Assembly: GCF_032062105.1 (NCBI RefSeq)
Contig: NW_026917963.1
Coordinates: 62,001-126,000 of the forward strand
Reading direction: 5' to 3'
Length of the DNA stretch: 64,000 nucleotides
Source of the DNA: Saccostrea cucullata
Taxonomy: Eukaryota
The notes under the pieces are model-generated. The model had not been told where the DNA came from. It did no database searches and worked only from the letters and a program-made list of their open reading frames with translations. The translations under genes were made by a program, and so were the position numbers. Of this stretch, positions 1 to 54,597 are shown piece after piece. Within the stretch, counting starts at the first letter, position 1; each line of letters opens with the position of its first letter.

Positions 1-186
1 GTCGTTTTTTCTCGAACCTTCACCTTTTCCTGTTGGTTTTATAGTTATGAAATATTACTGTTCTCTGTGTTCTGTGCCCGGCAAAACATTCTTTTCACCA
101 TCAGAATCAGAATTGCTGCAAACCCAATATGCTGTTATGTCTGTCACTAGTGTATATATTTTTATATGGAGTAATTTCTCTTGCAG

Positions 187-3100
187 TCGTGTATTTAGGA
201 CCGCTTATTTCTCCAATGGGTATGGTCCTATCTGGCAGGATAATTTACACTGTCTAGGCAATGAGACAGATATAGGAGACTGCGCCTCCAATGGTTGGGG
301 GAACACAGACTGTGGACATGGGGAGGACGCTGGAGTTTCTTGTGGTGAGTAGTTTTGTCACTGTTGTGAGTAGTTTTGTTACTGTGTAGGGAATTGTAGA
401 TGACTGCCTGTGGTATTGGATTCCAAAGGCATCGTAGTTTTGCTAATGGATGCAGTAATGAATGAGTGTCTTGTGATGAGTAGTTTTGTCAGAGTTGTAA
501 GTAGTTATGTCACTGTGTAGAGAATTGTATTGGTGACTGCTCCAATGCTCGGGCTAATGGATGCTGGAGTGTCTTGTGGTGAGTAGTTTTGTCACTGTTG
601 TGAGTAGTTTTGTCCCTGTGTACAGAATTGTATCAGTGACAGCTCCAGTGCTCGGGGTAATGGATGCCGGAGTTTCTTGTGGTGAGTACTTTTGTCTCTG
701 TGTAAGGAATTAAATAGGTGACTGTGATTCCAAAGGCTCGAGGTATCACGGACATTAGAAACTGAATTGCTATATTGTGAGTAGTTTTTTCACTATCCCT
801 GTATAGGTAAATTTTATATGAATGTGTCTCGAATGCTCTGGGTAACATGGACAGTGGACGCTGAATTAAAATTAAGTGAAAAGAGCGTTATCGAACTATG
901 ATACAGACATAATGTTTCTTGAGTGATGAGAGTTATTTCTAAAATTTAACATTATAAGAGATTTAAAGTCAAAACGAAGTTGCTAATTTGTGCAAAATTA
1001 ATGTATCCATACCTTTATTTTTTTTTTTACAAATGTAACTTACATATTGTATTTTTCCATTTTCTCCTATGAACACCTTTTCTATATTCATATGGTGCTA
1101 CATTAGTTTAAAATATATTTTATTCATTAAGAAATGGTGCTACATTAGCCTTTTATCTATTACATAGAACACTATTTAACTATTTCAATACTTTTTGCGA
1201 TAATATCCACATCAGAGTGTTTTTTATTATAGATCCCATTGACTTTGGACAAGTTCCTTCCTTTCAAAGAACAACTAGGGGTAATCCTTGTGTTTTAACT
1301 TCTACTCCTTGCCTGAATGGCGGAACCTGCATTGTCAGCGCTAACTACGGATATACCTGTCAGTGTGCTCAGGGATTTGGGGGACCGTACTGTCGAAATG
1401 GTAAATTTTGTCCAATTCAAAAACAGTTCTTACATTATATTTGCTCTGTTCTATATGAACAGGGCTGTCTCCTTCTCATGGGTGATAAGGATTTTACATC
1501 TTATTTCAGTTTCCTGTGGAATTTTCGTTGAACATTAGATCAAGTTTTGTTTACAATGAAAGCATAATATATTCAGTTAGTGGTAAAATGTATAGACTAA
1601 ACAAAATTTAAAAATGGTTAACTATATATAAAGTTTAGTCATTTTTCATTTCAGTACCTTTGAAACTTCATAATAGAGACATAATAATATATCCAACGAA
1701 TGAATTATTTTAGAAAACTGTTGCAAACATGTTGTGGTCCTTCAAGATTCGCAAGGCATATATATTCATTATATTTTTTTTATCAAATATAATCTTAGGG
1801 GCCATACTGTTTTAGTCTTTCACTTTTTTGCAATATAGATTTTTTATTGAAAAAAAAATCTTTATATTAAATTCGTATTAAATTCTATTTTAAGGACTTG
1901 CACGAACAACACCAAAGGACGCTTGTCGTAGCAATCCTTGTCAAAATAACGGCACTTGTTATCAATCTAATCACCACAATGGGTATCATTGCTCGTGTTC
2001 GAGTGGCTTTACTGGGAACTCTTGTGAAACTATAGGTATGCAATGCAATACAAAAATAATCATCTATTTTTTTAAACTCTTATTGTAAACTTTTTGACTA
2101 ACTCTATTTTATTTTTTTCTTAAAAGCATAATTGTGTTCCTCAGAAAATCTAAAATAAGTTGTAAAAATGTTGTTTCCAAAGACATATAGGTTTGTAATT
2201 ACTTTTAGATTCTTAATCTCAGATTTGGGATTCGTATCAAAAACGCCAGACTGTTTTGATCAAATTAAGAGTTAATGGAATCATGCAGGCATCTGTTTTT
2301 GTTAAAAAAACAATAAATTATATAGTTTTGTTGCCAAAGATTGACTTGTTTCCATTAAAGAGCGAATTACTAGTAGTTGTTTTCATTTGTACATATTCAA
2401 CAGAATTTAAGTTTATCTCAATATTATTATAGATATTGATGTAAACTCAATCGTATCAGTTGGATGTCTTGACAACGCATGGAACATTTCCGTATATCTT
2501 CCCTCTTTACAATCGAAATACCCGGATTTTAAGCCTAATGAATGTTATATAGGCATCGACAATATAAACTGCACAGGATATTTGAATGGAAGTTACTTAT
2601 ACTTCAGGCATGATTACTCGGAATGCAACACCAAAGAAAAGGTATTTTTGGTCTCAATTGTTTTAAAATATAAATGATATACAGATACTTTTAAATTTGT
2701 TATAATTAAATTCCTTTAAAATGCAAGTATCTGGTTTGATTTTAGTGCATCAAGTAATAATTCCTTACGATTTATTATTTCCGAAGACACATACAGAGAA
2801 AGTATTGAATCACACGAAATAAGTAAAATTTAAAATTTTGGTCGATCTAGTCATAAAATGATTTGTTTTCAAATTATAACCATCACTTTAGAATGGCCAT
2901 TTCAATGATAGTTAAAATAATTAAATTTTGTCAATTAATACAAGTCTTCTTTTATTCCTTCTCTTCAGAATTTAACAGAAGGTTTGGAATACAGCAGTGA
3001 GCTGATGTGTCCCCGCCATGATCGACTTTACCACTTCATAATCCGAGAAGTGCGCCTCCGGAGAACTCTTCTCTGCAAATTCTTCTCTCTAAACAGTGCT

Positions 3101-4141
3101 TCCTCTACTTTAAGGGACCGACTTGTGCACCTTCAGTATTTTTCTGATCCTTCGCTTTCGCGCTCAAAGTCTTTTGATAATTCTCAAGTTGGAGATAAAG
3201 TATATGTAAGGGCATTTAGTGACGTCACAGATAGCCATCTCAAAATGAGGCTGTCCTATTGTTATACAACACCAGCAATCGTCACCGAATCAAAGATGCA
3301 ATATTTCATAATTCGAAATGGGTAAAATATTTGATTCTTGCTTCTTCAGTCCAAGATTTCTATTGTCTATCATAAGATTGTAAGAAAAGTGCAAAACAGT
3401 ATATCAGAAAATACAAATTTTAAGCTCTTGCTCATTACCTGCAACCTAATCGATCTTTTGGATTATGAATATACAACTTTCACAGAATAAAAAACGTTTT
3501 TCATGGTTCTGGCACACGTTTTGTACGAGAACTTACTGTATGAGTGGATGTATCATTTTGTAGGTGTGTAGTTGATCCAAATGCAGTGATCTTTTACCAG
3601 TCTACTCACGAAACAAGATTCTCTTTTGAGTATATTCAGTTCACCAACAGCCACGATTCTATCAGTCTATACTGTAACGCTACATTCTGTCATACAAACG
3701 ATCATTCTCCCGCCTGTCAAACCACGTGTCATAGTCACGTGGTCAGAAGATTAAGGGGACATAAGAATGACATTGATTTATCAGATGAGGATGATACATT
3801 TAAAATGGATGTAGGCAAGTAAATACAATTGTTAATTTTGAAGGCAGTAACGAACCATAATAAAAATGACTTTGTACGTTTCCAATAAAGCATTTCTTAA
3901 TGTAAAGGAGGAAAAAGTAGTCCCTCCATTGATAAGTTCAAACAGTAAGATGCATTTAATGTATGCTCAATCTTTATTACTTACAGATGACAAACAGGTG
4001 ACAAATGTCAAGTCGAAGAAGGACTCAGCCTTGACGCCAGTGACTGTGATATCTGTGATTATTGGAGTCTGTGTTTTAGCGGTGTTAGCCATTGCAGTGA
4101 TTGTGAAGACAAAACGAAACAGGACTACTCTGAAGTTGTGA
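187..4141 (+). CDS. 3' part of an SRCR-EGF-EGF-ZP-transmembrane protein (DMBT1/uromodulin-like); exons 187-344, 1233-1400, 1895-2035, 2433-2641, 2969-3321, 3564-3814, 3987-4141; 5' exons lie outside the window
   Basis: SRCR C-terminal half (GPIWQDNLHCLGNETDIGDC...CGHGEDAGVSC), two EGF exons (CLNGGTC...CQCAQGFGGPYC; CQNNGTC...CSCSSGFTGNSC), ZP-like exons (CYTTP...IIRNGC; RFSFEYIQF...LYCNATFC), basic furin-like RRLR, hydrophobic helix VTVISVIIGVCVLAVLAIAVIV, then TGA. Splice phases are consistent. Confidence 0.88.
320..860 (+). repeat. Degenerate tandem duplications of the SRCR exon 3' end plus its splice donor
   Basis: The unit (gctggagt.tcttgtg)gtgagtagttttgtcactg recurs near 330, 465, 565, 665 and 775, interleaved with decayed gactgc.tccaatg exon sequence. 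Confidence 0.75.
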
Positions 4142-27600: not shown

Positions 27601-28864
27601 ATTGAGTGATGGAGCTATGGTGCGATAGTACTTTCATGGAGCTATGGTGCGATAGTAGCAACGCATGTGACAACGGGTAACACAACGGTAATGCCACATG
27701 CGTGGATATTAGACGGTTCACCGACAGAAATGTAAATGTGAATATCGAAAACCTTTAATGTGACACGTTGGTTGACAATGGTTTTCCTTGGGGTGTCAAT
27801 TTCGACTGTTACCCTCGAAAACAGGCACCATTTATATAATGGCAATGATACCATTGCTCGCATCGTCCGTCATCACACCATCGTGTCATCGTCATCACAC
27901 CATCGTCATCGCATTATCATGCAATCACTTCATTTTTATTGCATCATTGCTTCATCATCATCACATTATCGTGTCATCGCATTATCAACACACACCTGGA
28001 CGGCGTGATGATGCGATAGTGAACTGCATGGCCCTATCCGGATTCCATAGGATTTGGCTTTTTTTCTTACGTGTTTAATGTTGTTTACACAAATATTAGT
28101 GATATTACATATGTTCTTTAAGTCTTATATCATTTGAAACCATAAGCACAAAAGACCGAAAAGGTGTTGTTTTTTTTTCAATAAAGACACTAGTGCAAAG
28201 AAATAGGGCTGTATCAATATATCGATATATCGATACGTATCGATATTCAAGAATCATATCGTATAAAAAAATAACTTCCAATACGTATCGGGCAGACATT
28301 TTTTCTTCAAATTCTGTTTAAAAGATGGGAATTTCAATCACCAAAGATTATATTTTACTTTTTTTAATTTAAACCTTCAATAATTATATAATTTCTAAGG
28401 AAATAACACAGTTTTAATAATTATTACAAAATACAAAAAGACATTTTTTCGAACATGTTGATTTTAATGTCATCAAAAGTTTTAACTGAAGTGTTATCTT
28501 TAAAGACAATGAGACAAGAACTGTAAAATGGGTAATAAAACACCTATTTGTTATGAAATGTATGCATTAAAATGATTTAGAAGCCTTTTCTGATGGAATT
28601 GTTTCAGAATCCAATATATTGCATATCGCTTTAAAAAATATTGTATCGTATCGTATCGAAATTTTTGGCTCAATACACAGCCCTACAAAGAAATAACTTT
28701 CTGAGACCGCAGACAACGTTTGGACTGCGCAACAGACACAGCTAGAGGATACTCCTGACTTCCGGAGGGGGGTAGATGATCCCAATCACAGGTTTTGCCA
28801 CAGCAAGCTCCTCCTCCGTCTTGCCTTGATTCTCCGCGGGTAAATTCATCGTTACTGGAGGCAT
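9431..28864 (-). CDS. SF3A1: Splicing factor 3A subunit 1 (SAP114/Prp21), 766 aa; exons 28864-28753, 26754-26590, 26477-26455, 26229-26096, 25658-25499, 25285-25223, 24365-24275, 24039-23968, 23600-23524, 22207-22103, 21818-21647, 21419-21318, 19654-19482, 14534-14392, 14092-13866, 13316-13111, 12624-12523, 10230-10159, 9532-9431
   Basis: IIYPPPEVRNIVDKTASFVARNGPEFE (SURP1), DVVKLTAQFVARNGRQFLT (SURP2), YAQIDWHDFVVVETV, SPITGEKIPASKVQEHMRIGLLDP, a Pro-rich region, and a C-terminal ubiquitin-like domain ending KERGGRKK*. The 19 exons sum to 2301 nt with all phases matching. Confidence 0.97.
9662..9858. mobile_element. Degenerate CTGTATACAGGG-type MITE in the last SF3A1 intron
   Basis: ctgtatacagggttattttggcc versus gggcgaaaatttccctgt; internal ttcgc/gcgaa repeats. 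Confidence 0.55.
10377..12068. mobile_element. hAT-like non-autonomous element, copy 1 (8-bp TSD CTTATCAT), carrying a nested LINE fragment
   Basis: cagggctc ... gagccctg termini; cttatcat on both sides; highly similar to 19832-20886. Confidence 0.92.
10628..11274 (-). mobile_element. 5'-truncated CR1/L2-group LINE (ORF2 C-terminus, 3' UTR and (ATT)n tail)
   Basis: LQKRAARVIL...LRWMPI...VFKVLHGLTPDYL...RRSFTIYGSQLWNNLP followed by aataaa and an ATT microsatellite tail. Absent from the sister copy at 19832-20886. Confidence 0.85.
13608..13815. mobile_element. Tc1/mariner-type MITE with TA TSD
   Basis: TA-ctgtatatcact ... agtgatttacag-TA. Confidence 0.8.
14596..15696 (+). mobile_element. Helentron-type non-autonomous element (HINE/CvA-like) carrying about six copies of a 146-bp satellite monomer
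   Basis: 5' aactagaactgtc...ataccccccgc; the core ccagtgaccttgaac recurs at 14702, 14848, 14994, 15140, 15284 and 15430; (ACAG/ACGG)n microsatellite at 15564-15648; 3' hairpin atacccgcccaaacttcgtttgcggggggtat. Confidence 0.88.
15927..16728. mobile_element. MITE with CAGGG...CCCTG termini and 5-bp TSD TCAGG
   Basis: cagggattgacattaac / gttaatgtctacccctg; tcagg on both flanks; subterminal gggcaagt/acttgccc repeats. Confidence 0.85.
16881..19433. mobile_element. hAT-like MITE (8-bp TSD ATTATATC) interrupted by a CACTA element
   Basis: cagtgtttgaaa / tttcaaccactg termini; attatatc at 16873-16880 and 19434-19441. Confidence 0.85.
16911..19133. mobile_element. Non-autonomous CACTA/EnSpm element, about 90-bp TIR, 3-bp TSD AGC
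   Basis: Begins CACTActaagtcaaaaacg and ends cgtttttgacttagTAGTG; agc on both flanks; subterminal actga.aaacttaga repeats; internal (CT)n at about 18617-18671. Confidence 0.92.
19832..20886. mobile_element. hAT-like non-autonomous element, copy 2 (8-bp TSD TTTCGAAA)
   Basis: cagggctt ... gagccctg; tttcgaaa on both flanks; colinear with 10377-12068 minus the LINE. Confidence 0.92.
21420..21646 (-). other. GC-AG intron (SF3A1 intron 11)
   Basis: Donor AAAG|GCAAGG and acceptor tttttcag|CG give YDPK-A. There is no GT before the in-frame stop. Confidence 0.85.
22314..23380. mobile_element. PIF/Harbinger-type MITE, TTA TSD
   Basis: TTA-ccccccgttcacaca ... tgtgtgaacgggggg-TTA; CpG-rich with many cgtag/ctacg repeats. 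Confidence 0.9.
24501..24932. mobile_element. MITE with 13-bp TIR, TSD not resolved
   Basis: tggttctcaggcc ... ggcctgagaacca. Confidence 0.65.
25321..25482. repeat. Two-copy tandem duplication of about 83 bp in SF3A1 intron 5
   Basis: tgacaat.attacacttgtacacataaacctga...agaaatgcaaaacttta.atgagaattcaa.aaaatgca occurs twice. Confidence 0.8.
26911..27370. mobile_element. MITE with about 45-bp TIR inside the U12 intron
   Basis: caggtccagt..aagactatttctacctacatagctattaata versus tattaatagctatgtaggtagaaatagtctt..actggacctg; TSD unclear. Confidence 0.8.
27533..28047. mobile_element. TA-TSD MITE with (CAT/CATCG)-rich interior
   Basis: TA-tggaatcaggatagggc...gcagttcactatcgca versus tgcgatagtgaactgca...gccctatccggattcca-TA. 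Confidence 0.85.
28204..28685. mobile_element. hAT-like MITE, 8-bp TSD CAAAGAAA
   Basis: tagggctgt ... acagcccta; caaagaaa on both flanks; subterminal tatcg/cgata repeats. Confidence 0.9.
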
Positions 28865-28904
28865 TTTTGCAGGATTCGTTTGGCTTTCGCCGCTTTGAAT
28901 CGCA

Positions 28905-28918
28905 TAAAATGGCTGCCA
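28905..28918. promoter_or_regulatory. YY1-like motif about 45 nt upstream of the SF3A1 ATG
   Basis: aaaatggctgcc in the short GC-richer patch just 5' of the start codon; motif match only. Confidence 0.4.
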
Positions 28919-29279
28919 AGGGCACACAACTCCGGACCAAAAATTATTTGCTAACTCGTATACACTGAATGATTCGTATTCACGAGTAATATTGAAACTA
29001 CGTTTATTTTCCTTATATAAATAATAAAATAAACAAATTTAATTTATTTTTCTCCTTTTAAATTTTCACCAGTCCCAATTGATTCCTACATACCATGTTT
29101 CTGACTTTTGCTGTTTAGAATACAGTTGACAAATCCCAATATTGTTTTCTTACTATTCAAAACTATTCTGCAGAAATGATGATGCATACAGCAAAATTTA
29201 TTTGATTGATGTGTAGGACATCCCTTTTAAACTATGTAGTGGGAGAGGACACATAGTCACATATGTAGAGGACTACAAT

Positions 29280-29354: not shown

Positions 29355-30554
29355 ACCAGCGAGCGAATCCCACTGGCCATTACATGTGATTTCATCATTA
29401 ATTACAAATATAAGCTCTTAATTTAAAATGGAATTGCATGTACAGAAATACACAATCATGGGAAATATTAGCCATTGTAAATTAAAGAGTCTTTCTGACC
29501 TGGAAGACTGTGCAGTGTGATAATGATTTATTGGGGTAAATATGAAAAAAAAAAATCAGTTTAATACAGTAAAACTCAATTGTCCTGGACACTTCCTCAT
29601 AAATCCTTAGTTTTACTTTTTCTAATCCATTGGTTGTGTAATGACTGCTTCCTCAGCTAAAGTCAAAAGTATCGCACTGTGAGCCTCTAGCATGCTGGAG
29701 AAGTGTAGTAATGACATAAATAGAAACTGAATTTTTGTCTAGGCCATCATTAAAAAATTGTTTGTTTGGAAAAGGGTTTCTAGAAATTAATTTTTTTTTT
29801 TTAAATTGAAGATAAATTTTAAATTTTTGATTAAAATCTTAGTAAACAGTAAATAAACTTTTTAAAAAAGTATCTACCATTAACAGAAAAACCTTAAATT
29901 TTACATAGAGTTGTATTTCAACATATATAACTGGAAACAATTTATTAAATAAAAAAAAAACAATAAAATTTTTTGAATTTCTGAGGCGGGAGGCAATTCC
30001 AAACAAACAATGACCAGTTTAAACATATATTGGCATTTTTTAAATTTTAATTCTAGTTCTCCCTATACATGTTAAAAAAAAATTATACAAAAAATGGCTG
30101 TCAAATACAGGAAAATATGTGTATCAAATGATGAAAAATAAAATCCTCAACAAAATTATCATGCAAGTCTGATCCATCACTTTGCACTGGATCATAGTGA
30201 AAAATATTGCTTTGTCCAAATGGACATGAACTCAAAACACAATTATTTGCAACATAAGTACAAGTATAATTTACAATCTTCATCATCGGGGTCATTGCAA
30301 TACTTTCTCCATTGACATTTGGTAACTTTCTTGAGTCTGAAAACAACTGTCAGTGAATACTTTTTCGGTCTAAACAGCTAAAACAATAATTGTCCATAGT
30401 CAAACTATCTTCATTAATTGTCAAAGTCACCCAGATCAACACTGGAATTTTTTGTAACCAAAAAATATGACACTATTGTTCAACGCAACACTTTGTCCAT
30501 GTACATTCTGTGTCATTCCAGAGTCTGCTATTAACACCAGTGTTAAATTATTTT

Positions 30555-33500
30555 TCAATCTAACACAATAACCTTGCTGGTTGTCAAATCTTCATGATCG
30601 TCTAAATCACACAGATCAATCACAATGTCTGTTCCCAAAAATGTGGCCTCTTTCTTCACTTTCACATTCTCAACTGAAGAACCACTGCTCTGAGACATCA
30701 CTTCCACATCTTCCTTAACCCTATCTGAAATTCCCGGATCATTATTCCCATCCAGTGTCACAATGTTTGAATCCACAATTATTTTTTCTTCACCGGTCTC
30801 TTTTCCGTTACTTCCTTGTGAGTCGTAAGCTGTTCCGGCAAGTCCTTGAGATAAATCAACACTCTGTCCTCCCAGATCCCTCCCTTGACTGTGGCGGAGA
30901 TGTGAGGGGTAGGGAATAGGGACCACCGCTATACCCATGTCCCTCAGGTCCTGAGCAGTGACGTATTTGATGGAGAGTTTACTTCGGAGGGAATGAAGAT
31001 CCCAGTAGTCTGTGGAACGATATGCGTTCTTGAGCTGCAAGACACGGCCTGCCTTTGTAGTGGTCATCAGGTACTTGCCTAAAAGAAGAACAAGGAATTG
31101 GATAAAACAACCTTAAAAATATTTCTTTTCTAATATCCAAGTTAATGGTTTAAACTTTGCTTTCTTAAATTAGAACATATATCTTTAATCACATGTAATA
31201 ATGGTAATACATGTAACTAGGAATCCCATCTCTGTAAATTACAATTGATTATCTGAATCAGCAGATCAAATGTAATCATGGTAATAGAAAAATTTCTATT
31301 TCAGTTGCAATATCTATCTAGACACAACTGATATCCTCTCAATAATGTTACATGTAATACATGTAAAACACATACAAATGGGATCAACTGTTAGTTTACC
31401 AGCCATCATAAATGTGTGATCTGTGTGTTCTTTTGCATCTTTGCAGTGAGTATTCTATAAAACAAATTTTTTTCTCTAACCTTGTGTGATTCTCATGCTG
31501 TCCTTTTTGGAGCCGGAGGTAAAGTCCAGTTTGCGATTTCTGACTGATGTCTTTGTTGTCTTTAAGGTGGCATCCCAACACTCCACATCGATCCACCCCA
31601 CACGATCTGGTGATGGAGCCTCAGACTAATTAAGGCAAAAGTATTAATTAAAAGTAATGAATTAAGATATTATAAATCATATAAATATATAACCAATTAC
31701 CTGTAAATAAACACTTAAATCATATTAAAATATTTAGAAAATATTAAAAACTTTTCTTAAATAAATCAATCATTGTCATTGGGCCATTTTAAACAAGTTG
31801 TTAATTTTCCCTCGCCCAACCAAGTGCCTAAAAAATTGCTTTTTCGACCTCCTAGAAACGATTTTTTTTCTTTTTATTCCTGGATTTTCTCATCCAGTCA
31901 ATAAGTTTGTTTCAATTTTTTTTAGAAAAAAAATTCCCCCACCTACAAAGCAACCCTATCTTTTTTTTAGCCTTAGTTAGGAGAGGGCACACAAACTTTA
32001 TTTTACAGATGGCCTTACCAGTAATTGCCTATCTAACAAACCTGTGATTGCTTTAGACTGGGCATTGAGAATAAAAATTCTTTCACCATAATTCCATCTC
32101 GAAAGCCTTTAATAAGCCTGCATGGAATAAAAAGTTAATCATCATTCTTGAAACCTTGAATGTTTATAACATGTATAAAAAGATGTAGAATGTGAAATAT
32201 TCATTTCATCTTTGCCTTTCTATGCTTCCTATATAGCGTCCTCTTTACACAAAATCTCAATGAATTCAGAACCAAAATTTTAGACGAAGAGTATTTCAGT
32301 GAAATTGAATCCAAATAGTGATAAGGATTTTGAAGAACAAAAAAATCGGGCTCTGTTTCTTAAAGAAGCTTACTTATTCTCTCCCTGTTGAATGCTCCGT
32401 GACGTAACTTTCTGTCCGTCAATGAACACCCTGTAGTAGAAATGATGGTAAGATCTGTGTCCTGGTTTTGCTGATATACAAATGGAAAATGGTGTCACTG
32501 GCTGTTCCTGAAGTATAGAAAAATTCCTCTTGTTAAATGCAGTGCACAGGTCTGAGGCATGCATGTTTACTTTACATCAGTTCTTTTTTTCATCCAACAA
32601 ATACCCATTTTCTAATAATTTAGGTGGGCAGCCCGGCACAGAATCTGGCAAAAACTATTTTATACTATAATTTCGAGCGCAGCGAGCGTCGCGAGCGTCG
32701 TGAAGCGACACTTTTTAACGACATCAAAAAGTTGCTGCACATTTTATACAACAGTAATTTTGACCCACAATGCATCACTTCGTACACAAACGCTAAAGCC
32801 ACGTTCTTGCGAGAATAATGACAAAAGTAAAATGAAAAATAAACTTGCCTTGATTTAATGAATTTATCTGTTTTTGCAAAAAAATAGTCATAAACTGATT
32901 GAAATCAGATTGAAATCAGCCCTGTTCAGGCTTTAGTTTGGTAAAGCAACACGCAAACGACGCCGTGTGACGTCAGAGTCTTATACGCACCGAATGTCAC
33001 ATGCGATTTGACGAGTCAGATCTAAATAAAAACTGGATAAGTATCTGCGCTCGCCCTAACCGATGCACCGTCAACATGTACATGTAGTACACTAATGCAG
33101 AATAATAATTTGTTGGTGTCGGGAAGCAATGTTGATAGATTTCATGGGTCACACATACCCACAAATTTACATCCCCAGAAACATTTGTTAACTGTGATTC
33201 ATTGAAACTACGATAAAAACAAGTAAAGGCAAACCCATGAAATTACGAATCCATGAACAAATAAAATTTTGCTTGACTATGAACATTGATCCCCGAGAAT
33301 TAAAATTATTCCATAGTATATGAATACTTATGGCATGACGCTGTGTATGTGGATTTTTCACAGATTCATCATTGTCACAAAGATCATGTATCACATAGAT
33401 TATTTTTAAGTTTAATTTTAAGCAAAGAAGAAAAATTCAAATGCAGCAAGTGTCTATATTTTTTCTCAGTTATAAATTTAACCCTTTTCTCACCTGAGTT

Positions 33501-33655
33501 TCTATTTCATCTCCAACCCTTTCCTCTGTTTTCTGTTTAAAGCTGAAGGGGGAGAAGAAATCACACTCTACATAACACACCCCACCACGGACGTATTCCG
33601 GTAGGACTGTGTCACCCACCAAAATACTCACAGAGAAATCCTCATTGGATGGCAT
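30555..33655 (-). CDS. Uncharacterised 346-aa protein: beta-rich N-terminal domain resembling fungal DUF7918-type proteins and an acidic tail with SIM-like motifs; exons 33655-33494, 32507-32374, 32117-32042, 31625-31481, 31078-30555 (probable 5' UTR exon with its donor near 33835)
   Basis: Five GT-AG exons with matching phases sum to 1041 nt, ATG to TGA without internal stops. Motifs LPEY, CYVE, FSI, VFIDG, EFLFS, VGWIDVECW, IKYVTAQDLRDMGI, VKKE, IVIDL, VIVLD. The gene model is well supported; the family call is tentative. Confidence 0.8.
32674..33080 (+). mobile_element. Helentron-like non-autonomous element with the same end structure as 36251-36709
   Basis: Starts cgagcgcagcgagcgtcgcg and ends ctgcgctcgccctaaccgatgcaccgtcaacat; the ends match the reverse complement of the insertion in the 5' LTR. 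Confidence 0.65.
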
Positions 33656-34609
33656 GCTGATAAATCATAAAAAGTGATTTCACATCTTATGATCTTTTTT
33701 AGGAATTTACCTAAAAAATAAAAGGAAAAAAATCACGAGGAGAAATCTCTCTTTCACCCCTCCAGGTATGAATAACTTAAACAGTCTCGTTAAATACAGA
33801 TTCTTAAAGTAACTAAAATTAAAAACCATACTCACATTCTCCAACAAATACCGTCCGAATTTCCTACAATTTTTTTCATTTGTTGTAGTCAATTCGGTCT
33901 TGAAAGTATTCGAGATAGTTGCAAGTTCATGTATTATCAAAGGCGTACTTTAATAATAATAATAATAATATCGATTTGAACATTAAACATAAGTAATTTA
34001 TTGATTATTCCACTTAATTATATAGTTGCTCTTGTTAAAAATCTTTTTTATACAGGGAGTGGGATGAGGTAAAAATTTTACCCACTGAATCACAAGTTTA
34101 AAATTATACTTATGAATATATCAAGATAACAATTATAAATAAAGTATAATATTGTAGATGTTTTCTCATTTCAAACTGGTGATAAAATGAAATTTCCGTT
34201 TTGTCATATTATTGTATGCACCCCCCTCCCCCGAATCCACAAGCACTAATTGTTTAACCCATAGTATAACATGTATATAACTTTAAAAAAAAAAAAGGTT
34301 TGTGTAATATTTGCAACACAGGGGAGATTGATGATGGATTTCATTTCCTATTCAGTAGGTTAACATTTAAAATTTAACTTTGAATTTGATGAATTTTTTT
34401 CCAGGAAAATTTTCAAATATGTCCTATAAATACTAAAAAAAATTAAATAAACGTACTTTGCTTTAAATAGTTTTATATTAACCTGTGCCCTGAAATTCTA
34501 ATTGCATATGCATTGCACAATTATTGTCCAAATGATTGTATAATTTTTGTATAACCTCACATTCTTTTCTAAAATATTGTTTAAATGCATGAACAATTGA
34601 TGCTTCTTA

Positions 34610-48384: not shown

Positions 48385-51300
48385 TTAAATGATTGATTCC
48401 CTGTTGACTGGTTCGAATCGCTCGTCATGACTCGACGTACTCGCCTGACTCGAGCTCTGACACATGTGAAGTTCGAGTTCCGAGAGTCTGTGTTCGACGT
48501 CCCATTGCTGTCTGTGCAATTTGGCCGTCATGGAGGCGTTTTCTGTTTCCAAGGAAACCAAACGTTCTCGGAGCGTGTTGATTTCTTTGAGTAAAACGTC
48601 ATTGGGTGTATCGTATGAAAAACTTTGTGGGCTCACGGAGCCATAGTTCGATATGTTATACCCAGGGGATACTGGAACTAGAGCAGGCTGGGGGTGATTT
48701 TGTGGGGACAGGTTGATGTGAGACGATGAAAGGTTATCCGAGCGACTTGTGGCAAGACTGGGCGAAGACAAAGGATTCATTGTATTTGACACACAATATG
48801 GAGACAAAAAATTCATTTGTTGAGGATGGTTTTGAAACGGATATGTATGAGTGTAGGTAAAGCTCAGGGGCGATAACTGAGCGGGACTTCCGCCGGCGTT
48901 ACTAAGAATAGGCGTTGCCGCACTGATGGTCGGTATGTTTGGAGTTTGGCACAGACTTCTGGGTGAGATCGGGGGACTATAGCCTGGGTGTCCAATGGAC
49001 CGGGTAGGGGTGGTGCCTCCCGTATATGACGTCATCGTCCCCACGTTGGTGATGTCACAATTTTCAATCTGTATTGAGTTTTGTTCAGCAGTAATTTCAG
49101 CGTGAGCATTTTCACCCGTTTCTGAAGAATTTTCATCTTGAGTCCCTTCGTCACCGCTTGAGGGTGACTGTTTTGGAAGACCAGCCGGAAGAGTATGGTG
49201 ACGAGTTATCATCATGGCTTCTAAGGGAATTTTCCCGGATGATTCTACAAGCCCCGGTGTGCTCTTGCTTCTTGCCAGCGCTACAAAGTATTGGAAGCCA
49301 AGTTAATGATAGAATAAAACACAGAGTCAATAGGCTGTTTATGCTTGTTTTATGTTTGACTGCAGAAGAATGTGCGAAGATTAATTATTTTCCCCTATAA
49401 ACACAAACATTCTATGGAAATTATCTTGTCATTTAGCATTATAGCTTTAGTTAGTAACTCGGTAATTTGACTTTTATACATATATACATGCAAGACAATT
49501 TAAAGCGTAGTGCTAAAATGATATATGATAATCGGTGCTTATGGAATACTCATCGCTACTTATGATATATAGGCTATTTTCATATACATTTTTTCATTTT
49601 GATCGAAATATTTTTGAAAGGGAGCTAAACACACCTTTTTCAATAGGGATCTTTTTAGTTTTCTCTAGCCTTTTAACAGCTATAGCTTCAAGTTTCACCC
49701 TGGCTGCAGGATATTCTTTCAAAACATCCCAGAGATCCTGTTTAGAGAGTCGGAATAGGTCCGAATATCCTACAGAACGAACTGACGCTGTCCGTCGGTT
49801 ACCGGAAGTCCCCATGTTAAGAATGCTGATTTCCCCAAAATAACTTCCGGGTTTAAGAGTAGCAAGCACCGTTTTCCCGTTGTCGGCGACCACGTGCAAC
49901 CTGCCTCTGTTGACAATGTACATTTCCTTGCCGACCTCACCTGCAAATTAAATTTACAAAATGTAAAAAATGATAACTACTCCAAGTTAGTAGTTCTTGC
50001 AGATTTCAATAAAAGTACAGAAAGGAACACAGTTTGATTAAATTTTGCATTTTGGGAGGAGCAAGGTTGAGAATAATGGTTGAAAATCATAGTCGTCCAG
50101 TTACTCATCTTCGCTAATGGTTTCCGATCCGAAAGAGTAGATTTCGGATCTAGCTGCGAAGATGCCAGCTACTGAGCTTTTTCGGGTTTGCCGAAAAGAT
50201 ACGAATATATGTAGCGAGACTGTAACTGCAGAGGACAATTTAGCGAATCAAAACGTGGTGGAAAAACCTTCTTGAATTGAATGATTATACATGCAGGTTT
50301 ATCTTGCAAGGGAATGATTTCAACTTTCAATTAACGAATTTCCAACTTATTGTGGACATTTTAGAAAATTGTAAAAAGATTAATCATATTTTGATCCAGA
50401 AAAATATTATGATAGAAACTCCTAGGTCATCACTTTTATGCATGTGGAATCGTAGCTAGTTCAAGAAAATCAAAATAAGCCAATAAGATTATATTGGACT
50501 CAATGGAATACTAGTATATAACCAAACCTGTATTTTTCTTCATCATTTTTATGAAATACAAGAGATTTATGAAATCAATTATAAGCAAGCATTGTAGAAG
50601 GTTGGTTTCATTCAATATTAATTTTCAGGGCTACTTATAATCTTTGATGTTCCATTTATCTCGAGATTCAATCCACGTATATTGTCGTAATTACAACGTA
50701 CAACAGAATACACGCTCTTAAAATTAATTAAGTTCAACCAAAAATCTCGATGATTTATTAAATATTGATGTTCATGTTTTGAAATAGCCCAAAGCAGACT
50801 TTAATTGTTGGGGGAGTGTCTTATCAATAATTGAACAATGGGTTTTAATGGTTTATACATAGTCCCTCGAACTACCGTCAACTAATGAAAGAAAAAGTTT
50901 ATCTGTAAATAAGAAACTCTTTTCATAGAGACACGTACAATATTATTAAGGTAAATTGGATATTTTTTTCTTGTGCAGCATTAAGTATGGGCAACAGAAA
51001 ATGGGCTACCGTGCTCATCTGGTCCTACTTCGCAAAACATCATACGACTGTCATGTTGTAAATTTTGAATTTACCGGGTGGCAGTAAATACAAAATTTAC
51101 AACATGACAACAGTTGTCATGTTGTAAATTTTGTATTTACTGCCACCCGGTAAATTCAAAATTTACAACATGACACGACCAAGACAAAGAATGGGCAACC
51201 ATGTAATTTTTTGTTTTAAGAAGTATGATTTGTATCTCTTCCCCCCCCCCTGAACACTACTTATTAACAATATAAACTAATGTTCTAAAATTATTAATTT

Positions 51301-54206
51301 GTCTTTCGTTCTACTGTAGTTTAGATATTTGTTGAGGAATGGGACATTTTTTGTACTAGTCGTAAGATTTTTTTTTGGGAAAGGGTCGACCACAGTATAT
51401 ATGATAGTTTCCTAGTGTAGCATGGATGTAATATTTGTTCATTTTATTTTTCGGAGATTTTATTATTCATACATGTGTGCATGTGTAAAATTTAAAGCTT
51501 CTTTTAGCCAAATCATAATTCTAGATCAAAATTAAGTAAACTTTCTACGATGTTCCAAATCCTTAGGCTACTTTTTTTCACATGTCACCCTTTTAAACCT
51601 ATTCAACTTTTCATCAGTTTATACGTCTAGGCATTATTTTGAAAATGTTGAATGAAAAGTTGAAATCTAATTAAACATACTTAAATCAATGATAATGACT
51701 GAATATTTATTTGAAGTTATTGGCACTTTCGAAAAAAAATCATTTTCATTTCAATCCTTGAAAATTCTTCATCTAAATCTTTCACCCGCCTAGAAAAAAA
51801 AAATGTGAGAGAATCGCTGACCCTGGTATAAAGAAAACATCATCGATCTCTTCGTCCTAATTTAATTCCGCTAACACCAATCTGAAAACGAGATTCCACC
51901 GCGGGGCAAGTACGTTCGCCGCTCAACCTTTTCTAGATATATTTTCAAATATAGCGAATAGATTATCCCCGTACAAAACTGACATTTTTCTTTTGTCCAT
52001 CGAAGAAACCAATTAGGGGTGATATTGTAATGCAAATGGAGAAAGGAAATATTTGCCACTACGAGTCACGCCATTGCTTTAAACATCGACAAATTGAAAC
52101 AGCGGCCATAAAGCGAGACATTTGTGACTTTGTCTTTTGTTCTTTTTTACTGTTTCATTAGATACAAAGCAATCAATAAGATTCTCTGCATTGACCAGAG
52201 GCACTGGTTCGCAGTAGAAGGCCACGTTTTTGTCTCTCTCTATCGCTCTCATAAATATGTATGGCAATTAACCCTTTCGACTTTGAAATCTTTCATTGCC
52301 GCCTTTTCCGATTATGGGGTTTCTGTGGCCAAAGAATTCTTTATCATTAATTATTTTCCCTTCTGTATAATTCTCTAAATTTTTAACTCAACAAAACCAT
52401 GTGTTGTTTGTAATTTCAATACAGCCTTGCCTTAAAGACAAATCATTACAAAATCTTTTTTTTTTTTTTTGGTTAATTTTCTTTTTTTTTATGATGGTTT
52501 TAAAGTCTAATCACTTTTCTACAAATGGCGCCCATAAAGGGAAGTCCTTAGGGAACGTCTACTAATTATCGTTCCTAGTTCTTTTGTCGGCGGTCGAACG
52601 GTAAGACTGCAATCTACATTTAAAGGAACATATAACACAAGGAACATCCGCACAATTGCAACCATCCAGGATGTGAAATATACAATTGTCAACGTCACTA
52701 ACTGTTGATGCTAACCCTGGCCAAAGGCATTGAACCATTATGATAATAATCTATAATTTAAGCAAATTAGAATGTATACATGAATATTTTTCAAGAAATT
52801 TCAATTTTGAATGAACTACGACACTTTACACCGGTATATTTCATGAAACACTGTGCAGATGTGAAACATTGTATAAACTGTGTAGTTCAAGTAATTAATA
52901 TGTTATTAATATTAACTTTACAATATCTTGTAACAAATTTATATCCTTCAATTATCATTTTCGAAGCAAAACCGTTAACATTATTTTGACGACCTCAACA
53001 TAAAGATAATTGTGCTAGTTGAGTTCATGAGAAAATGGACATATATAGTTTTCGAATTTACAGAGAATCTTATGGGAAAGTATTTTGACTTGTACGTAAA
53101 TTTTATATAAGCTTCAAAATGTAAAAGCTACATAAAGGTCTTTCCCTTAACATCTTACATTTTCTCAGATTTTTAGAACATTTTAAATTGTATACCAAAA
53201 CAGCTGAAATGTATCATTAAAGAATTTTCATTTTTTTCGTCACCCAAGACTTAATAGAATTCTACTTTTCTAATTCCAAATGATATTTCAAGGGACCTTG
53301 TGAGATTTCATGGATTTACATAAAGTGAACCTGCAGACGGTACTTTAACCAATATGATATATGATAATGTCTGTAAAATACTTGTAAGCATGTCAGTTGT
53401 ATATAAGCGCATTTCCTTTTACAAGCATTTTGTCTTCATTACTGTGCACTCTCTGACTTAACAAGGAACCTAATTGCATGTCAATACATGTGCAACGGCA
53501 GCGTTCAAAGTCAAAACGAGGTTAATCTTGCCTGCAGAAAAGGACTTCATTGAATTAGCAATTCAAAAATCCAGTTGTAAATTCAATAGCAGTACCTTAC
53601 AAAGCGCTCTAGTTATGGTAAAGAAGGTTCAGAAACATCTTTAAGTACAGATAACGTTCTTATCAATTTTATTGACTATTTTCTGTACTGAATAGTAAGA
53701 GGCTCGCGGGTCGTGACAGTCACCTTAGGAAACTGAATATTCTTACAGGTTTTCCGATACATCGTTTTGTCTCTGTCTTTTAGTATACTTAAATGTTGTT
53801 CCTGTAGCTATGTTACAGAAAAATTGGAGGGAAATGAATGGAAGTATTCATATTCTCCTCCGATTGACATAGCTCTTGGATTTTTAATTACGACAACAAT
53901 TGAAGTCATTACCTTTCCTACAAATATAATCCCCAGGCGAGAAGAGGACGGGTTTAAGGCGCAGCACCAGTTCACACAAAAAACCGGCGTCCGTGTTTTG
54001 GAAGATTTCCACCCGTTTTAGAGTGTCTAGGTGCACGTGTATGGCAATTTCCGCCTTAAGTTTGTCTGGTAGAAGGGCCAGAGTTTTTTCCTCGTCGGTT
54101 GATTTGTTGCAGTACCACAGGTAGTCGAACCACTTGATGACCCGGTCTTGCAGCCGGATAGGTACCCGTCGTAAGGACATATACGTCTTCACCCCATCCA
54201 ACTTTC
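48385..54206 (-). CDS. 3' part of a cyclic nucleotide-gated cation channel alpha subunit; exons 54206-53913, 49940-49635, 49280-48385; upstream exons not found in the window
   Basis: C-linker [15 protein letters not shown]...[10 protein letters not shown]...[21 protein letters not shown]; [24 protein letters not shown]...YFGEISIL...[16 protein letters not shown]; Ser/Pro-rich tail with a terminal coiled coil. Phases are consistent. Confidence 0.94.
51049..51175. repeat. Perfect 127-bp palindrome (63-bp arms, 1-nt centre) in a CNG intron
   Basis: The arms are exact reverse complements around 51112, and each arm is itself a hairpin. Confidence 0.9.
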
Positions 54207-54597
54207 CTAAAAATTTCAAAATAAAATGCTTTAGTCCAACTTGTATTCGCAGGAGAGAAGTATCCGTAAATTTGCTCTTCACTTGCAAAAATTTCTTCTC
54301 GTGAATCAATTCCATGCATTTTTCTTATACTTTTAAGTCGCAAAAAAATAATTTTCGTAAATTTATTCCAAAAAAGATATATAGCAAATAATTAAGTTAT
54401 TAGTTTACAGTAATTGATAGATTGATAGTCAAATAATTAATTGAGAAATAAAAATGTGGTGCCATGTGACTATGGTTATCTAAATAAATGACTGATTAAT
54501 GAGATTTTTTTAGCAAGACACCAGCTGCATGGATCTATTTGAACAAAAAAATCTTATTTTTGGTATAGGTCATTGAAATATTAATCATCTAGTAGTA

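What the first reader, a model, noticed from the sequence alone, without database searches (positions are those of the whole stretch)
30555..33655. Uncharacterised spliced gene resembling a fungal-type DUF domain in an animal genome
Seen: a clean five-exon 346-aa CDS that the ORF track shows only in fragments. The motif order (V.ILVG...LPEY, CYVE, FSI, VFIDG, F.FS, G.I.V, .KY.T...L..MGI) matches my recollection of the mostly fungal DUF7918-type family, whose members also tend to end in VKxE and IDL motifs. I recognise no vertebrate or insect orthologue. Inference: either an ancient family with patchy loss or an old horizontal acquisition that has gained introns. It lies directly upstream of SF3A1 on the same strand.
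Basis: partly seen in the sequence, partly recalled or inferred. Interest (0 to 1): 0.75.

Follow-up and report, generated by a model that had tools for sequence, protein, structure and literature searches.

The report
Oyster gene related to fungal DUF7918
This is a real, spliced and expressed oyster gene for an uncharacterised protein whose folded front half is a distant relative of a mostly fungal domain of unknown function and whose floppy tail carries short motifs typical of SUMO-regulated nuclear proteins.

Summary
On the minus strand, five exons (33655-33494, 32507-32374, 32117-32042, 31625-31481, 31078-30555) with GT..AG introns give 346 codons plus a stop. Each exon's translation lies exactly in the NCBI protein 'uncharacterized protein LOC134268328 [Saccostrea cucullata]'. 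Contigs of RNA runs from a close relative carry all four joints.

The gene is single-copy in this genome. Relatives were found in 21 named species: bivalves, gastropods, two hemichordates, a nemertean and an octocoral. No vertebrate, insect or nematode turned up.

The DUF7918 link is real but distant. The window protein scores 17.7 bits against Pfam's cut-off of 27. Three unnamed relatives pass the cut-off, and one of them hits the mollusc-only profile at 1.6e-48. The ESM Atlas puts it next to fungal DUF7918 clusters by features and by structure.

Residues 1-225 model as an Ig-like beta-sandwich with no specific PDB match. The tail is disordered and acidic. It holds conserved psiKxE sites and a C-terminal VIVLD-type motif.

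An ancient family with patchy loss is favoured over horizontal transfer. Function is inferred, not shown. The scan's only earlier notes are on this same window.

The parts
33494..33655 (-). Exon 1 (codons 1-54, ATG at 33655): start of the beta-sandwich domain, MPSNEDF...VSILVGDTVLPEY...CYVE
   Evidence: Family-profile match E 1.1e-20. Joint 32506/33493 in 4 of 4 runs.
32374..32507 (-). Exon 2 (codons 55-98 plus 2 bases): WPVTP-type strand, FSI, VFIDG
   Evidence: It is the only exon with a Pfam DUF7918 hit on its own (E 0.049, 14.1 bits). Family-profile match E 5.6e-13.
32042..32117 (-). Exon 3 (1 base plus codons 100-124): GFRDG...EFLFS
   Evidence: Family-profile match E 1.8e-5. Joints on both sides.
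31481..31625 (-). Exon 4 (codons 125-172 plus 1 base): GWIDVEC strand and the conserved SKKD loop
   Evidence: Family-profile match E 1.6e-12. Joint 31625/32042 in 3 of 4 runs and 31077/31480 in 4 of 4.
30555..31078 (-). Exon 5 (2 bases plus codons 174-346 plus TGA): end of the domain and the whole tail
   Evidence: Family-profile match E 5e-35. As a phmmer query it found 12 proteins with E <= 0.001 among 1.84 billion representatives.
30912..31078 (-). Part of exon 5 that codes the last strands of the DUF7918-like domain (to residue ~228), including TTKAGR and IKYVTAQDLRDMGI
   Evidence: AlphaFold2 strands 185-188 and 192-213, pLDDT 79-90. Pfam alignment reaches residue 222. Coordinates.
30558..30911 (-). 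Disordered acidic tail, residues ~229-346
   Evidence: pLDDT below 50 for 228-346. Over the last 125 residues (222-346): 23 D/E against 10 K/R. 82% identical to S. echinata but 13-21% to mussels and gastropods, against 91% and 46-56% for the domain.
30648..30659 (-). VKKE (residues 313-316), a psiKxE SUMO-acceptor-type site
   Evidence: 26 of 29 tails hold at least one [VILF]KxE: 36 seen against 5.1 expected, and 0 of 1000 shuffles reach that number.
30588..30629 (-). DIVIDLCDLDDHED (residues 323-336): hydrophobic core VIDL followed by an acidic run, as in the SIM consensus
   Evidence: Consensus hhXh/hXhh flanked by acidic residues, from passages of PMC8616421.
30558..30575 (-). KVIVLD at the very C-terminus (residues 341-346)
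   Evidence: 15 of 29 tails end in [VILA][VILEQ][VILE][VIL][DE], against 0.02 expected from shuffles.
33656..33700 (-). 5' untranslated region (at least this far), with a short out-of-frame upstream ATG at 33668
   Evidence: Contigs reach 33689-33700. An 8-base gap at 33662 is seen in 3 of 4 runs. Sequence read.
30500..30554 (-). Start of the 3' untranslated region (it continues below the laid stretch)
   Evidence: The spanning contigs run 364-406 nt beyond 30503 (table 8).

Best explanation
This is a real, single-copy, expressed protein-coding gene of the oyster Saccostrea cucullata, annotated at NCBI only as an uncharacterised protein.

Shown here: the first ~225 residues form an all-beta, Ig-like sandwich. 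This domain is a divergent animal branch of the DUF7918 superfamily, whose Pfam-recognised members in the Atlas clusters are mostly fungal. The last ~120 residues are disordered and acidic and evolve fast, apart from short motifs. The family is present, with one named protein per species among those found, in bivalves, gastropods, hemichordates, a nemertean and an octocoral. Inside bivalves its tree follows taxonomy. The gene is therefore old in animals and vertically inherited, and it was probably lost in lineages such as vertebrates and insects, where no relative was found.

Inferred: the protein is most likely a nuclear adaptor tied to the SUMO pathway. The sandwich would bind a still unknown partner. 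The tail would be SUMO-modified at its psiKxE lysine (K314 in VKKE). It would also bind SUMO through SIM-type motifs: VIDL plus an acidic run, and the C-terminal VIVLD, which recalls the C-terminal IIVLSDSD of Daxx. I put about 0.9 on the gene and the family assignment and about 0.35 on the SUMO mechanism.
For: Gene model. Splicing and conservation in a relative: all four joints with CT..AC ends on the + strand (GT..AG on the minus strand), and two contigs spanning all five exons at 92-97% identity. Single copy: five exon matches, all inside the window.

Distribution: 21 named species from four animal phyla (taxonomy).

DUF7918 link: Pfam 17.7 bits, collinear over 60-222 against 40-224 of 228. 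6 of 30 aligned relatives match at E <= 0.1. P0038, P0046 and P0047 are over the cut-off, and P0038 is hit at 1.6e-48 by a mollusc-only profile. Atlas features: 27 of 30 hits in the DUF7918 set, top score 0.93 with 203 shared features. With DUF7918 clusters left out, the best score falls to 0.76. Atlas structure: TM 0.84 and 0.68/0.76 to fungal clusters.

Fold: pLDDT 75-91 over most of 1-115 and 131-215, all strands.

Tree: all 12 named bivalves fall in one 16-row clade, with oysters, mussels, scallops and unionids each starred.

Tail: psiKxE 36 seen against 5.1 expected, 0 of 1000 shuffles as high, present in 26 of 29 tails from lineages whose tails are otherwise 13-21% identical. C-terminal motif in 15 of 29 against 0.02 expected. 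SIM and psiKxE consensus and the Daxx SIM come from passages of PMC8616421.
Against: The window protein and most animal relatives are below Pfam's gathering score (17.7 against 27). 24 of 30 aligned relatives give no DUF7918 hit at E <= 0.1.

The five exons searched alone gave only one weak hit. A search of the whole genome with the Pfam model listed only one unrelated weak candidate (E 7).

No fungal sequence was in hand, so homology to fungi rests on the Pfam model, the Atlas and transitivity.

My loose count of SIM-type cores in the tails is not above shuffles: 36 against 28.9, and 78 of 1000 shuffles reach it. The tails are related to one another, so the shuffle figures overstate independence.

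Classical NLS-like K[KR]x[KR] patches occur in only 7 of the 29 tails, and not in the window protein's.

No PDB structure gives a functional lead: best Foldseek E 0.018, best VIA Z 6.0. The runs laid are contigs from a relative, so they show neither strand nor expression in this species.
Confidence: 0.75

Rival explanations
1. The gene came into an early animal by horizontal transfer from a fungus (or another microbial eukaryote) and later gained its four introns and its tail.
For: Pfam-recognised DUF7918 clusters in the Atlas are dominated by Ascomycota and Basidiomycota. The animal distribution is patchy, with no vertebrate, insect or nematode among the hits. The relatives that score best against the Pfam model are five tail-less, unnamed proteins that form a clade apart from the animal rows (99/98).
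Against: The family is present in Cnidaria, Hemichordata, Nemertea and Mollusca, so a single transfer would have to predate the cnidarian-bilaterian split. At that depth it cannot be told from vertical descent within opisthokonts. The bivalve part of the tree follows taxonomy. The gene is single-copy, has four introns and sits between ordinary animal genes. No bacterial or archaeal relative was confirmed: 10 pattern matches, 0 confirmed.
Confidence: 0.1
2. The domain is an animal-specific Ig-like sandwich unrelated to DUF7918. On this view the sub-threshold Pfam hits and the Atlas neighbours reflect a shared common fold and composition only.
For: 17.7 bits is under Pfam's cut-off, and 24 of 30 relatives give no hit at E <= 0.1. 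Ig-like sandwiches are very common: 48 PDB chains reach Z >= 5 and none stands out. The Atlas tool itself warns that a top score of 0.9 or more arises for 4 to 10 in 100 shuffled proteins.
Against: The Pfam alignments are collinear and nearly full length. Three clear relatives pass the curated cut-off and join the animal proteins at E 1.6e-48 to 5.5e-64. There are 203 shared Atlas features. Leaving DUF7918 out drops the best feature score to 0.76. TM is 0.68-0.84 over 182-220 residues to fungal clusters.
Confidence: 0.07
3. The family assignment is right, but the tail motifs have nothing to do with SUMO. The C-terminal VIVLD and the VIDL stretch would be another kind of short linear motif, for example strand addition to the protein's own sandwich or to a partner, or a degron. 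The [VILF]KxE sites would be a by-product of a V/I/K/E-rich tail.
For: The count of SIM-type cores is not above shuffles (36 against 28.9). The SIM consensus is degenerate, and many predicted SIMs are not real (passage of PMC8616421). Scallop tails end in KFL[IV] instead, and several tails lack the C-terminal motif: 14 of 29. No experiment bears on it.
Against: psiKxE is seven times over the shuffle mean, so composition alone does not give it. The C-terminal motif is fixed in position across oysters, mussels, a gastropod, a hemichordate and an unnamed clade, while the rest of the tail diverges. Acceptor sites together with hydrophobic-acidic motifs in one disordered acidic tail is the usual picture of SUMO-regulated proteins (recalled; consensus).
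Confidence: 0.4
4. The model is an annotation artefact or a decaying pseudogene.
For: It is seen only as fragments by an ORF finder. No function is known.
Against: The frame is intact over 346 codons and the introns are canonical. Spliced contigs occur in 4 of 4 runs laid. The domain is 91% and the tail 82% identical to S. echinata, and the domain is 46-56% identical to distant molluscs. There are 24 invariant columns over 30 relatives.
Confidence: 0.02

Closest known systems
Pfam PF25534, DUF7918 (domain of unknown function; the Atlas clusters carrying it are mostly Ascomycota and Basidiomycota)
   Same: Same order of conserved blocks, with a collinear alignment over profile positions 40-224 of 228. 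The N-terminal V.ILVG..L.EY block matches profile positions 2-17 in relative P0041. Same predicted fold: TM 0.68/0.76 to a DUF7918 cluster. Nearest family by language-model features.
   Different: The window protein scores 17.7 bits, under the cut-off of 27. The precomputed Pfam column is '-' for every named animal protein found. It comes from an animal, has four introns, and carries a long acidic tail with psiKxE and C-terminal hydrophobic-acidic motifs. Whether fungal members have such tails was not tested.
SUMO-interacting tails of Daxx, PIAS and RNF4 type (works-like comparison only, not homology)
   Same: Hydrophobic cores of the hhXh/hhhh kind next to acidic residues (VIDL+CDLDDHED; VIVLD at the C-terminus). 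Daxx's SIM is IIVLSDSD (passage of PMC8616421); that it lies at Daxx's C-terminus is recalled. A psiKxE acceptor site lies in the same disordered region.
   Different: No sequence relationship. No RING, SP-RING or other catalytic domain. SUMO binding is untested. The loose SIM count is not enriched over shuffles.
Uncharacterised ~180-340-aa proteins of large DNA viruses in BFVD (baculovirus p22.2-type ORFs, ascovirus, iridovirus, nudivirus, nimavirus, pithovirus, marseillevirus, mimivirus-like)
   Same: Foldseek gives 23 matches with E <= 0.001, the best at 1.6e-6 with probability 1.00. The Atlas also lists a Uroviricota cluster at TM 0.58 and bacterial clusters at 0.63.
   Different: TM is only 0.28-0.55 by target, rmsd is large and identity is 7-14%. 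None has a known function. No sequence-level link was tested. Some weaker hits carry RING or ubiquitin-like domains, which the oyster protein lacks.
Generic Ig-like beta-sandwiches in the PDB (ASF1, MSP/VAP, PapD-like/ASH, fibronectin-III, Ig C2)
   Same: About 90-117 of the ~225 domain residues superpose at rmsd 2.6-4.5 with Z 5.0-6.0. ASF1 chains are common among the top weak Foldseek rows (E 0.018-0.09).
   Different: No match stands out: Z < 8 for all 48,161 chains, and no Foldseek E <= 0.001. The domain is about twice the size of these modules, with long hairpins and a conserved flexible loop at 160-180.

Membership tests
Pfam DUF7918 (PF25534) | Whole-protein score at or above Pfam's gathering cut-off (27 bits) | tested here: not met
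   P0013, which equals the window's protein, scores 17.7 bits, E 0.0039. S. echinata P0001 scores 15.5 bits. Exon 2 alone scores 14.1 bits and the other four exons give no hit. Relatives P0038 (49), P0047 (32.1) and P0046 (30.5) do pass.
Pfam DUF7918 (PF25534) | Collinear alignment over most of the 228-position profile | tested here: met
   Residues 60-222 against profile 40-224. P0038 residues 60-225 against 52-224, and P0041 residues 7-22 against 2-17.
Pfam DUF7918 (PF25534) | Homology by transitive profile search to proteins that pass the cut-off | tested here: met
   A profile of 10 proteins (6 named molluscs and 4 unnamed rows that later grouped with molluscs, A1) hits P0038 at 1.6e-48. 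Profile A3 hits P0046 at 5.5e-64 and P0047 at 2.0e-63, but A3 itself contained P0038.
Pfam DUF7918 (PF25534) | Same predicted fold as recognised members | tested here: met
   The Atlas's own model of P0013 has TM 0.68 (by query) and 0.76 (by target) over 182 residues to a cluster in which 45% of members carry PF25534. TM is 0.84 over 220 residues to a Mucoromycota-dominated cluster without Pfam. Both sides are predictions.
Pfam DUF7918 (PF25534) | Direct profile-profile or tree relationship with fungal seed sequences | not testable with these tools
   No fungal DUF7918 sequence could be fetched. All three word-indexed searches and the one exhaustive search returned only the animal and unnamed clade.
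SIM-containing SUMO-binding proteins (functional class, not a homology family) | hhXh/hXhh core of I/V/L flanked by acidic residues | tested here: inconclusive
   Present in the window protein: IVTL+D, VIDL+CDLDDHED and C-terminal VIVLD. The C-terminal motif is conserved in 15 of 29 tails against 0.02 expected. The overall count of such cores is 36 against 28.9 in shuffles, which is not enriched.
SIM-containing SUMO-binding proteins (functional class, not a homology family) | Measured non-covalent binding to SUMO | not testable with these tools
   This needs a pull-down or NMR titration.
SUMO substrates with consensus site | psiKxE motif in an accessible region | tested here: met
   VKKE at residues 313-316, inside the segment with pLDDT below 50. 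26 of 29 tails have at least one: 36 against 5.1 expected. The motif is met; the modification itself is untested.

The most novel reading that the evidence does not exclude
DUF7918 may be an ancient opisthokont beta-sandwich module. Its animal branch, kept in marine invertebrates (molluscs, nemerteans, hemichordates, octocorals) and not found in vertebrates or insects, would have gained a SUMO-acceptor plus SUMO-binding tail and would act as a so far unrecognised reader or adaptor of the SUMO pathway. The same fold would also have been taken up by baculoviruses and giant viruses, in some of them next to RING or ubiquitin-like domains. That would point to a general role as a substrate-recognition module in ubiquitin-like signalling.
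Probability: 0.2. Interest if true: 0.55.

Novelty: new variant of a known kind. Interest (0 to 1): 0.35.

Why it matters
It gives a first family assignment and a testable functional idea to a conserved 'uncharacterized protein' of oysters, mussels, scallops, abalone, acorn worms, a ribbon worm and a soft coral. It also widens a domain of unknown function, so far recognised mostly in fungi, to animals. If the tail motifs work as they look, the protein would be a simple entry point for finding out what DUF7918 does. The practical weight is modest. Patchily distributed conserved hypothetical proteins are common, and nothing here overturns current views.

Tried and rejected
- Pfam on the five exons one by one gave only one weak hit, on exon 2.
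- Searching the whole genome with the Pfam DUF7918 model listed only one unrelated weak candidate on another contig (E 7). It did not list the window's own exons, so that search was uninformative.
- PDB by sequence gave nothing: best E 0.26.
- Foldseek against the PDB gave no match at E <= 0.001.
- VIA-align against 48,161 chains gave only generic Ig-like sandwiches with Z <= 6.0.
- PHROGs gave nothing for P0013 or P0038, and only weak hits (E 0.012-0.19) for P0037 and P0045.
- A scan of bacterial and archaeal genomes found 10 pattern matches, none confirmed. Only one peptide pattern was used, so this blank is weak.
- The full-text library returned no paper for 'DUF7918' or 'PF25534'. I found nothing in print under those names. 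Subscription journals are not covered.
- A paper search on baculovirus 'p22.2' led only to a genome table with no function (passages seen).
- I considered ASF1-like histone chaperone function, because ASF1 chains are common among the top weak Foldseek rows and the tails are acidic. I rejected it as unsupported: E 0.018-0.09, TM 0.13-0.28, and ASF1 is not among the 50 VIA rows shown.
- My loose SIM-core count was not enriched over shuffles, so I rest the SIM idea on positional conservation only.
- Rows dropped before counts. The tail statistics used 29 of 36 full-length relatives. P0023 and P0045 were left out because my anchor pattern did not match them. P0038, P0040, P0046, P0047 and P0048 were left out because their tails are only 6-18 residues.
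- The tree used the first 262 residues of 36 rows. Fragments P0002-P0004, P0006, P0007, P0009-P0012, P0039, P0041, P0042 and P0049-P0051 were left out.
- Supplementary files of papers were not consulted, and none bears on a claim here.
Full report
**What is there.** Reading the minus strand between 33655 and 30555 gives five exons: 33655-33494, 32507-32374, 32117-32042, 31625-31481 and 31078-30555. Their lengths are 162, 134, 76, 145 and 524 nt, which sum to 1041 nt, or 346 codons and a TGA. All four introns begin GT and end AG. I translated each in its own frame by reference.

**The model equals an annotated protein.** A search with exon 5 alone (collected) found 12 proteins with E <= 0.001 among 1.84 billion representatives. 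The best was a 345-aa protein, P0001. A word-indexed search with that stored protein returned P0013, 'uncharacterized protein LOC134268328 [Saccostrea cucullata]', 346 aa. The five exon translations sit in P0013 exactly, at 1-54, 55-98, 100-124, 125-172 and 174-346. The two missing residues are the split codons.

**Is it expressed and spliced?** One run search listed 23 runs that each hold only 5-6% of the sampled words. I laid four of them, from four studies, on 30500-33700. Depth falls on the five exons and is absent from most intron bins. The exception is a repeat in intron 1, about 32750-33080, where many short contigs with unlike flanks lie.
- The joints 31077/31480, 32116/32373 and 32506/33493 are present in 4 of 4 runs, and 31625/32042 in 3 of 4.
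- All have CT..AC ends on the + strand. With the stated shifts of one base, they are exactly the exon ends above.
- Two single contigs (1483 nt in X2, which is on record as RNA, and 1506 nt in X14) run through all five exons.
- These contigs differ from the window: 46 of 575 letters in exon 5, and 2-8 letters per exon in exons 1-4. They therefore come from a close relative or a divergent strain (coded organism A).
- They show that the spliced form exists and that the exon structure is conserved. Being contigs, they show neither strand nor level.
- The oyster genome has no second or intron-less copy. A profile of the family finds five matches, all of them these exons, with E from 5e-35 to 1.8e-5.

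**Relatives.** Three word-indexed searches returned 11, 36 and 38 proteins. They were run with P0001, with a 10-row alignment A1 and with an 18-row alignment A3.
- The named records come from 21 species:
  - Bivalves: Saccostrea (2 species), Ostrea, Mytilus (2), Pecten, Ylistrum, Argopecten, Mizuhopecten, Sinanodonta, Potamilus and Tegillarca.
  - Gastropods: Gigantopelta and Haliotis (4).
  - Hemichordates: Saccoglossus and Glandiceps.
  - The nemertean Lineus.
  - The octocoral Dendronephthya.
- No vertebrate, arthropod or nematode protein appeared. That means 'none found' with tools of limited reach; it does not prove absence.
- The other hits are unnamed transcriptome or metagenome proteins.
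- A maximum-likelihood tree of the domain (36 rows) puts all 12 named bivalves in one 16-row clade (support 86/75) with Gigantopelta as its sister (89/83).
- Oysters, mussels, scallops and unionids are each starred. Relations among phyla are left open.
- A starred branch (99/98) separates five tail-less unnamed proteins from the 31 other rows, which hold all the named animal proteins.
- This pattern fits vertical inheritance of a single gene within molluscs and an origin at least as old as the cnidarian-bilaterian ancestor.

**The DUF7918 question.**
- Exon by exon, only exon 2 touches Pfam DUF7918 (E 0.049, 14.1 bits).
- The stored whole proteins score 17.7 bits (P0013, E 0.0039, residues 60-222 on profile 40-224 of 228) and 15.5 bits (P0001). 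Both are under Pfam's cut-off of 27.
- Of 30 aligned relatives, 6 match at E <= 0.1.
- The tail-less relatives do better: P0038 49 bits, P0047 32.1 and P0046 30.5 (all over the cut-off), then P0048 22.2 and P0040 21.
- P0038 was found by alignment A1 (named molluscs and their close unnamed kin) at 1.6e-48. So the animal proteins are tied by strong profile scores to proteins that Pfam itself accepts.
- Independently, the ESM Atlas places P0001 next to DUF7918 clusters by features. 27 of 30 hits are in that set, the top score is 0.93 with 203 shared features, and the taxa are Basidiomycota and Ascomycota.
- With DUF7918 clusters excluded, the best feature score for P0013 residues 1-228 is only 0.76.
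- By structure, the Atlas's own model of P0013 aligns over 220 residues at TM 0.84 with a Mucoromycota-dominated cluster without Pfam. It aligns over 182 residues at TM 0.68/0.76 with a Basidiomycota DUF7918 cluster.
- I conclude that the domain is a true but divergent relative of DUF7918. I do not file it as a member as Pfam now delimits the family, because the curated score is not met.
- I could not fetch fungal sequences.
- The full-text library returned no paper for 'DUF7918' or 'PF25534'.

**Fold.** AlphaFold2 with the 30-row alignment gives an all-beta domain for residues 1-225, with 10-residue pLDDT means of 75-91 over most of it. There are low-confidence loops at 118-131 and 160-179, and a disordered tail from 228 to 346.
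- Foldseek finds no PDB match at E <= 0.001; the weak rows include many ASF1 chains, plus UNC119, PDE-delta and Fc-receptor sandwiches.
- VIA-align over 48,161 chains finds 48 with Z >= 5 and none with Z >= 8. All are Ig-like sandwiches aligning about 90-117 residues.
- PDB sequences give nothing. So the fold is a large Ig-like sandwich with no informative solved relative.
- Against predicted viral structures there are 23 matches with E <= 0.001, the best at 1.6e-6. All are to uncharacterised proteins of baculoviruses (p22.2-type ORFs), an ascovirus, iridoviruses and giant viruses; weaker rows (E 0.0035-0.03) include nudiviruses, a nimavirus and an abalone herpesvirus. A few still weaker ones carry RING or ubiquitin-like domains. 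TM by target is only 0.28-0.55, so I keep this as a lead.
- The most conserved sequence block outside the strands, (Q)ANKKD...G.Y.M.TTK.GR (SGSKKD...TTKAGR in the oyster, residues ~160-184), falls in a low-confidence loop. It may be a binding site, but this is inference.

**The tail.** Between oysters and mussels or gastropods the domain is 46-56% identical, but the tail only 13-21%. The tails keep short motifs all the same.
- [VILF]KxE occurs 36 times in 29 tails against 5.1 expected from shuffled tails. None of 1000 shuffles reaches that count, and 26 of 29 tails have at least one. In the window protein it is VKKE at 313-316 (window 30648-30659).
- Fifteen of 29 tails end in four aliphatic (or E/Q) residues followed by D or E, against 0.02 expected. 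Here that is VIVLD.
- Two more tails end in IIID and three in ALLD (read from the listing).
- An internal VIDL followed by CDLDDHED (323-336) fits the SIM consensus: an hhXh or hXhh core with acidic flanks.
- The psiKxE acceptor consensus and the Daxx SIM IIVLSDSD are described in passages of PMC8616421 that I read.
- Against this reading, my loose count of SIM-type cores is not above shuffles (36 against 28.9; 78 of 1000 reach it). The tails share ancestry, so shuffle figures overstate independence.
- NLS-like basic patches are found in only 7 of 29 tails, and not in the oyster's.
My counts partly bear it out.

**How it most likely works.** Shown: it is an expressed single-copy gene, with a folded N-terminal sandwich under strong constraint and a fast-evolving acidic disordered tail that holds conserved short motifs. 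Inferred: it is a nuclear adaptor whose tail is SUMO-modified and binds SUMO, while the sandwich holds a partner. I give this mechanism about 0.35. The main rival is that the motifs serve another purpose.

**Origin.** An ancient opisthokont family with patchy loss is favoured. A transfer would have to predate the cnidarian-bilaterian split. No bacterial or archaeal relative was confirmed: 10 pattern matches, 0 confirmed, from a single pattern.

**Surroundings.** SF3A1 follows on the same strand. An N-terminal-looking ORF lies at 28742-28927, and Surp-module ORFs at 26549-26728 and 25103-25681. Only 25103-25681 was scanned against Pfam (Surp, E 3.5e-22); the ORFs are listed. The name SF3A1 and the Surp reading of 26549-26728 rest on my recollection of its sequence. 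The spanning contigs continue 364-406 nt below 30503. That leaves roughly 1.2 kb between the two genes.

**Verdict.** This is a divergent animal branch of a known domain of unknown function, with an added tail: a new variant of a known kind, of moderate to low interest.

Noticed in passing
window 32750-33080 (intron 1 of the gene): This is a repeated element. Many short contigs of the RNA runs lie here at 90-95% identity, with unlike flanks and internal skips. So it is present, and perhaps transcribed, at many places in the relative's genome (tables 5, 7, 8).
   Followed up: no
window 19440-28927, minus strand: An SF3A1-like gene lies here. It has an N-terminal-looking ORF at 28742-28927, Surp-module ORFs at 26549-26728 and 25103-25681, a proline-rich ORF at 21597-21815, and further ORFs down to 19440. 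It begins about 1.7 kb below the stop codon of the DUF7918-like gene.
   Followed up: partly
window 37456-39851, plus strand: This is a remnant of an LTR-type retroelement. A 442-aa ORF has Retrotrans_gag and a zinc knuckle. A 321-aa ORF follows with an aspartyl protease and an integrase C-terminal domain. No reverse transcriptase appears in the ORF list. I only observed it.
   Followed up: no
window 48385-54343, minus strand: These are exons of a cyclic-nucleotide-gated-channel-like gene, with cNMP_binding at 49594-49923 (E 1.8e-13). A 276-aa Ser/Pro-rich ORF at 48385-49215 ends in a heptad-like stretch and has no Pfam match. It may be the channel's C-terminal exon.
   Followed up: no
window 47-4141, plus strand: ORFs here carry an SRCR domain (47-352) and an EGF domain (1217-1531). 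A later ORF (3866-4141) has a hydrophobic stretch that looks like a membrane anchor. Together they are probably one multi-exon receptor-like gene.
   Followed up: no
window 33656-33700: The 5' leader has an out-of-frame upstream ATG at 33668 that opens an 8-codon ORF overlapping the start codon. The relative's contigs lack 8 bases at 33662 in 3 of 4 runs, so this small ORF is probably not conserved.
   Followed up: partly
P0013 residues 160-184 (window 31481-31517 and 31044-31078): This is the most conserved non-strand block of the family, (Q)ANKKD...G.Y.M.TTK.GR (SGSKKD...TTKAGR in the oyster). It lies in a loop with pLDDT below 50 and spans the exon 4/5 junction. It may be a binding or modification site.
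   Followed up: no
model m3f42ad0172ce against BFVD: There are 23 Foldseek matches with E <= 0.001 to uncharacterised proteins of baculoviruses (p22.2-type), an ascovirus, iridoviruses and giant viruses; nudiviruses, a nimavirus and an abalone herpesvirus appear among weaker rows (E 0.0035-0.03). Still weaker rows carry RING or ubiquitin-like domains. The Atlas also lists bacterial clusters at TM 0.63 and a phage cluster at 0.58.
   Followed up: partly
P0026-P0030 (Tegillarca and four Haliotis proteins): In these species the tail has grown to 323-362 residues, with 82-127 acidic residues and repeats such as KEDGD. This led automatic pipelines to name them after HMGN5, dentin sialophosphoprotein or a sodium/potassium/calcium exchanger. 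Those names are misleading.
   Followed up: partly
L001 = G000:C22520:101418-101549, minus strand: This was the only candidate when the whole genome was searched with the Pfam DUF7918 model: E 7, 15.8 bits, a 54-aa open frame. It is probably chance. The family-profile search did not find it.
   Followed up: partly
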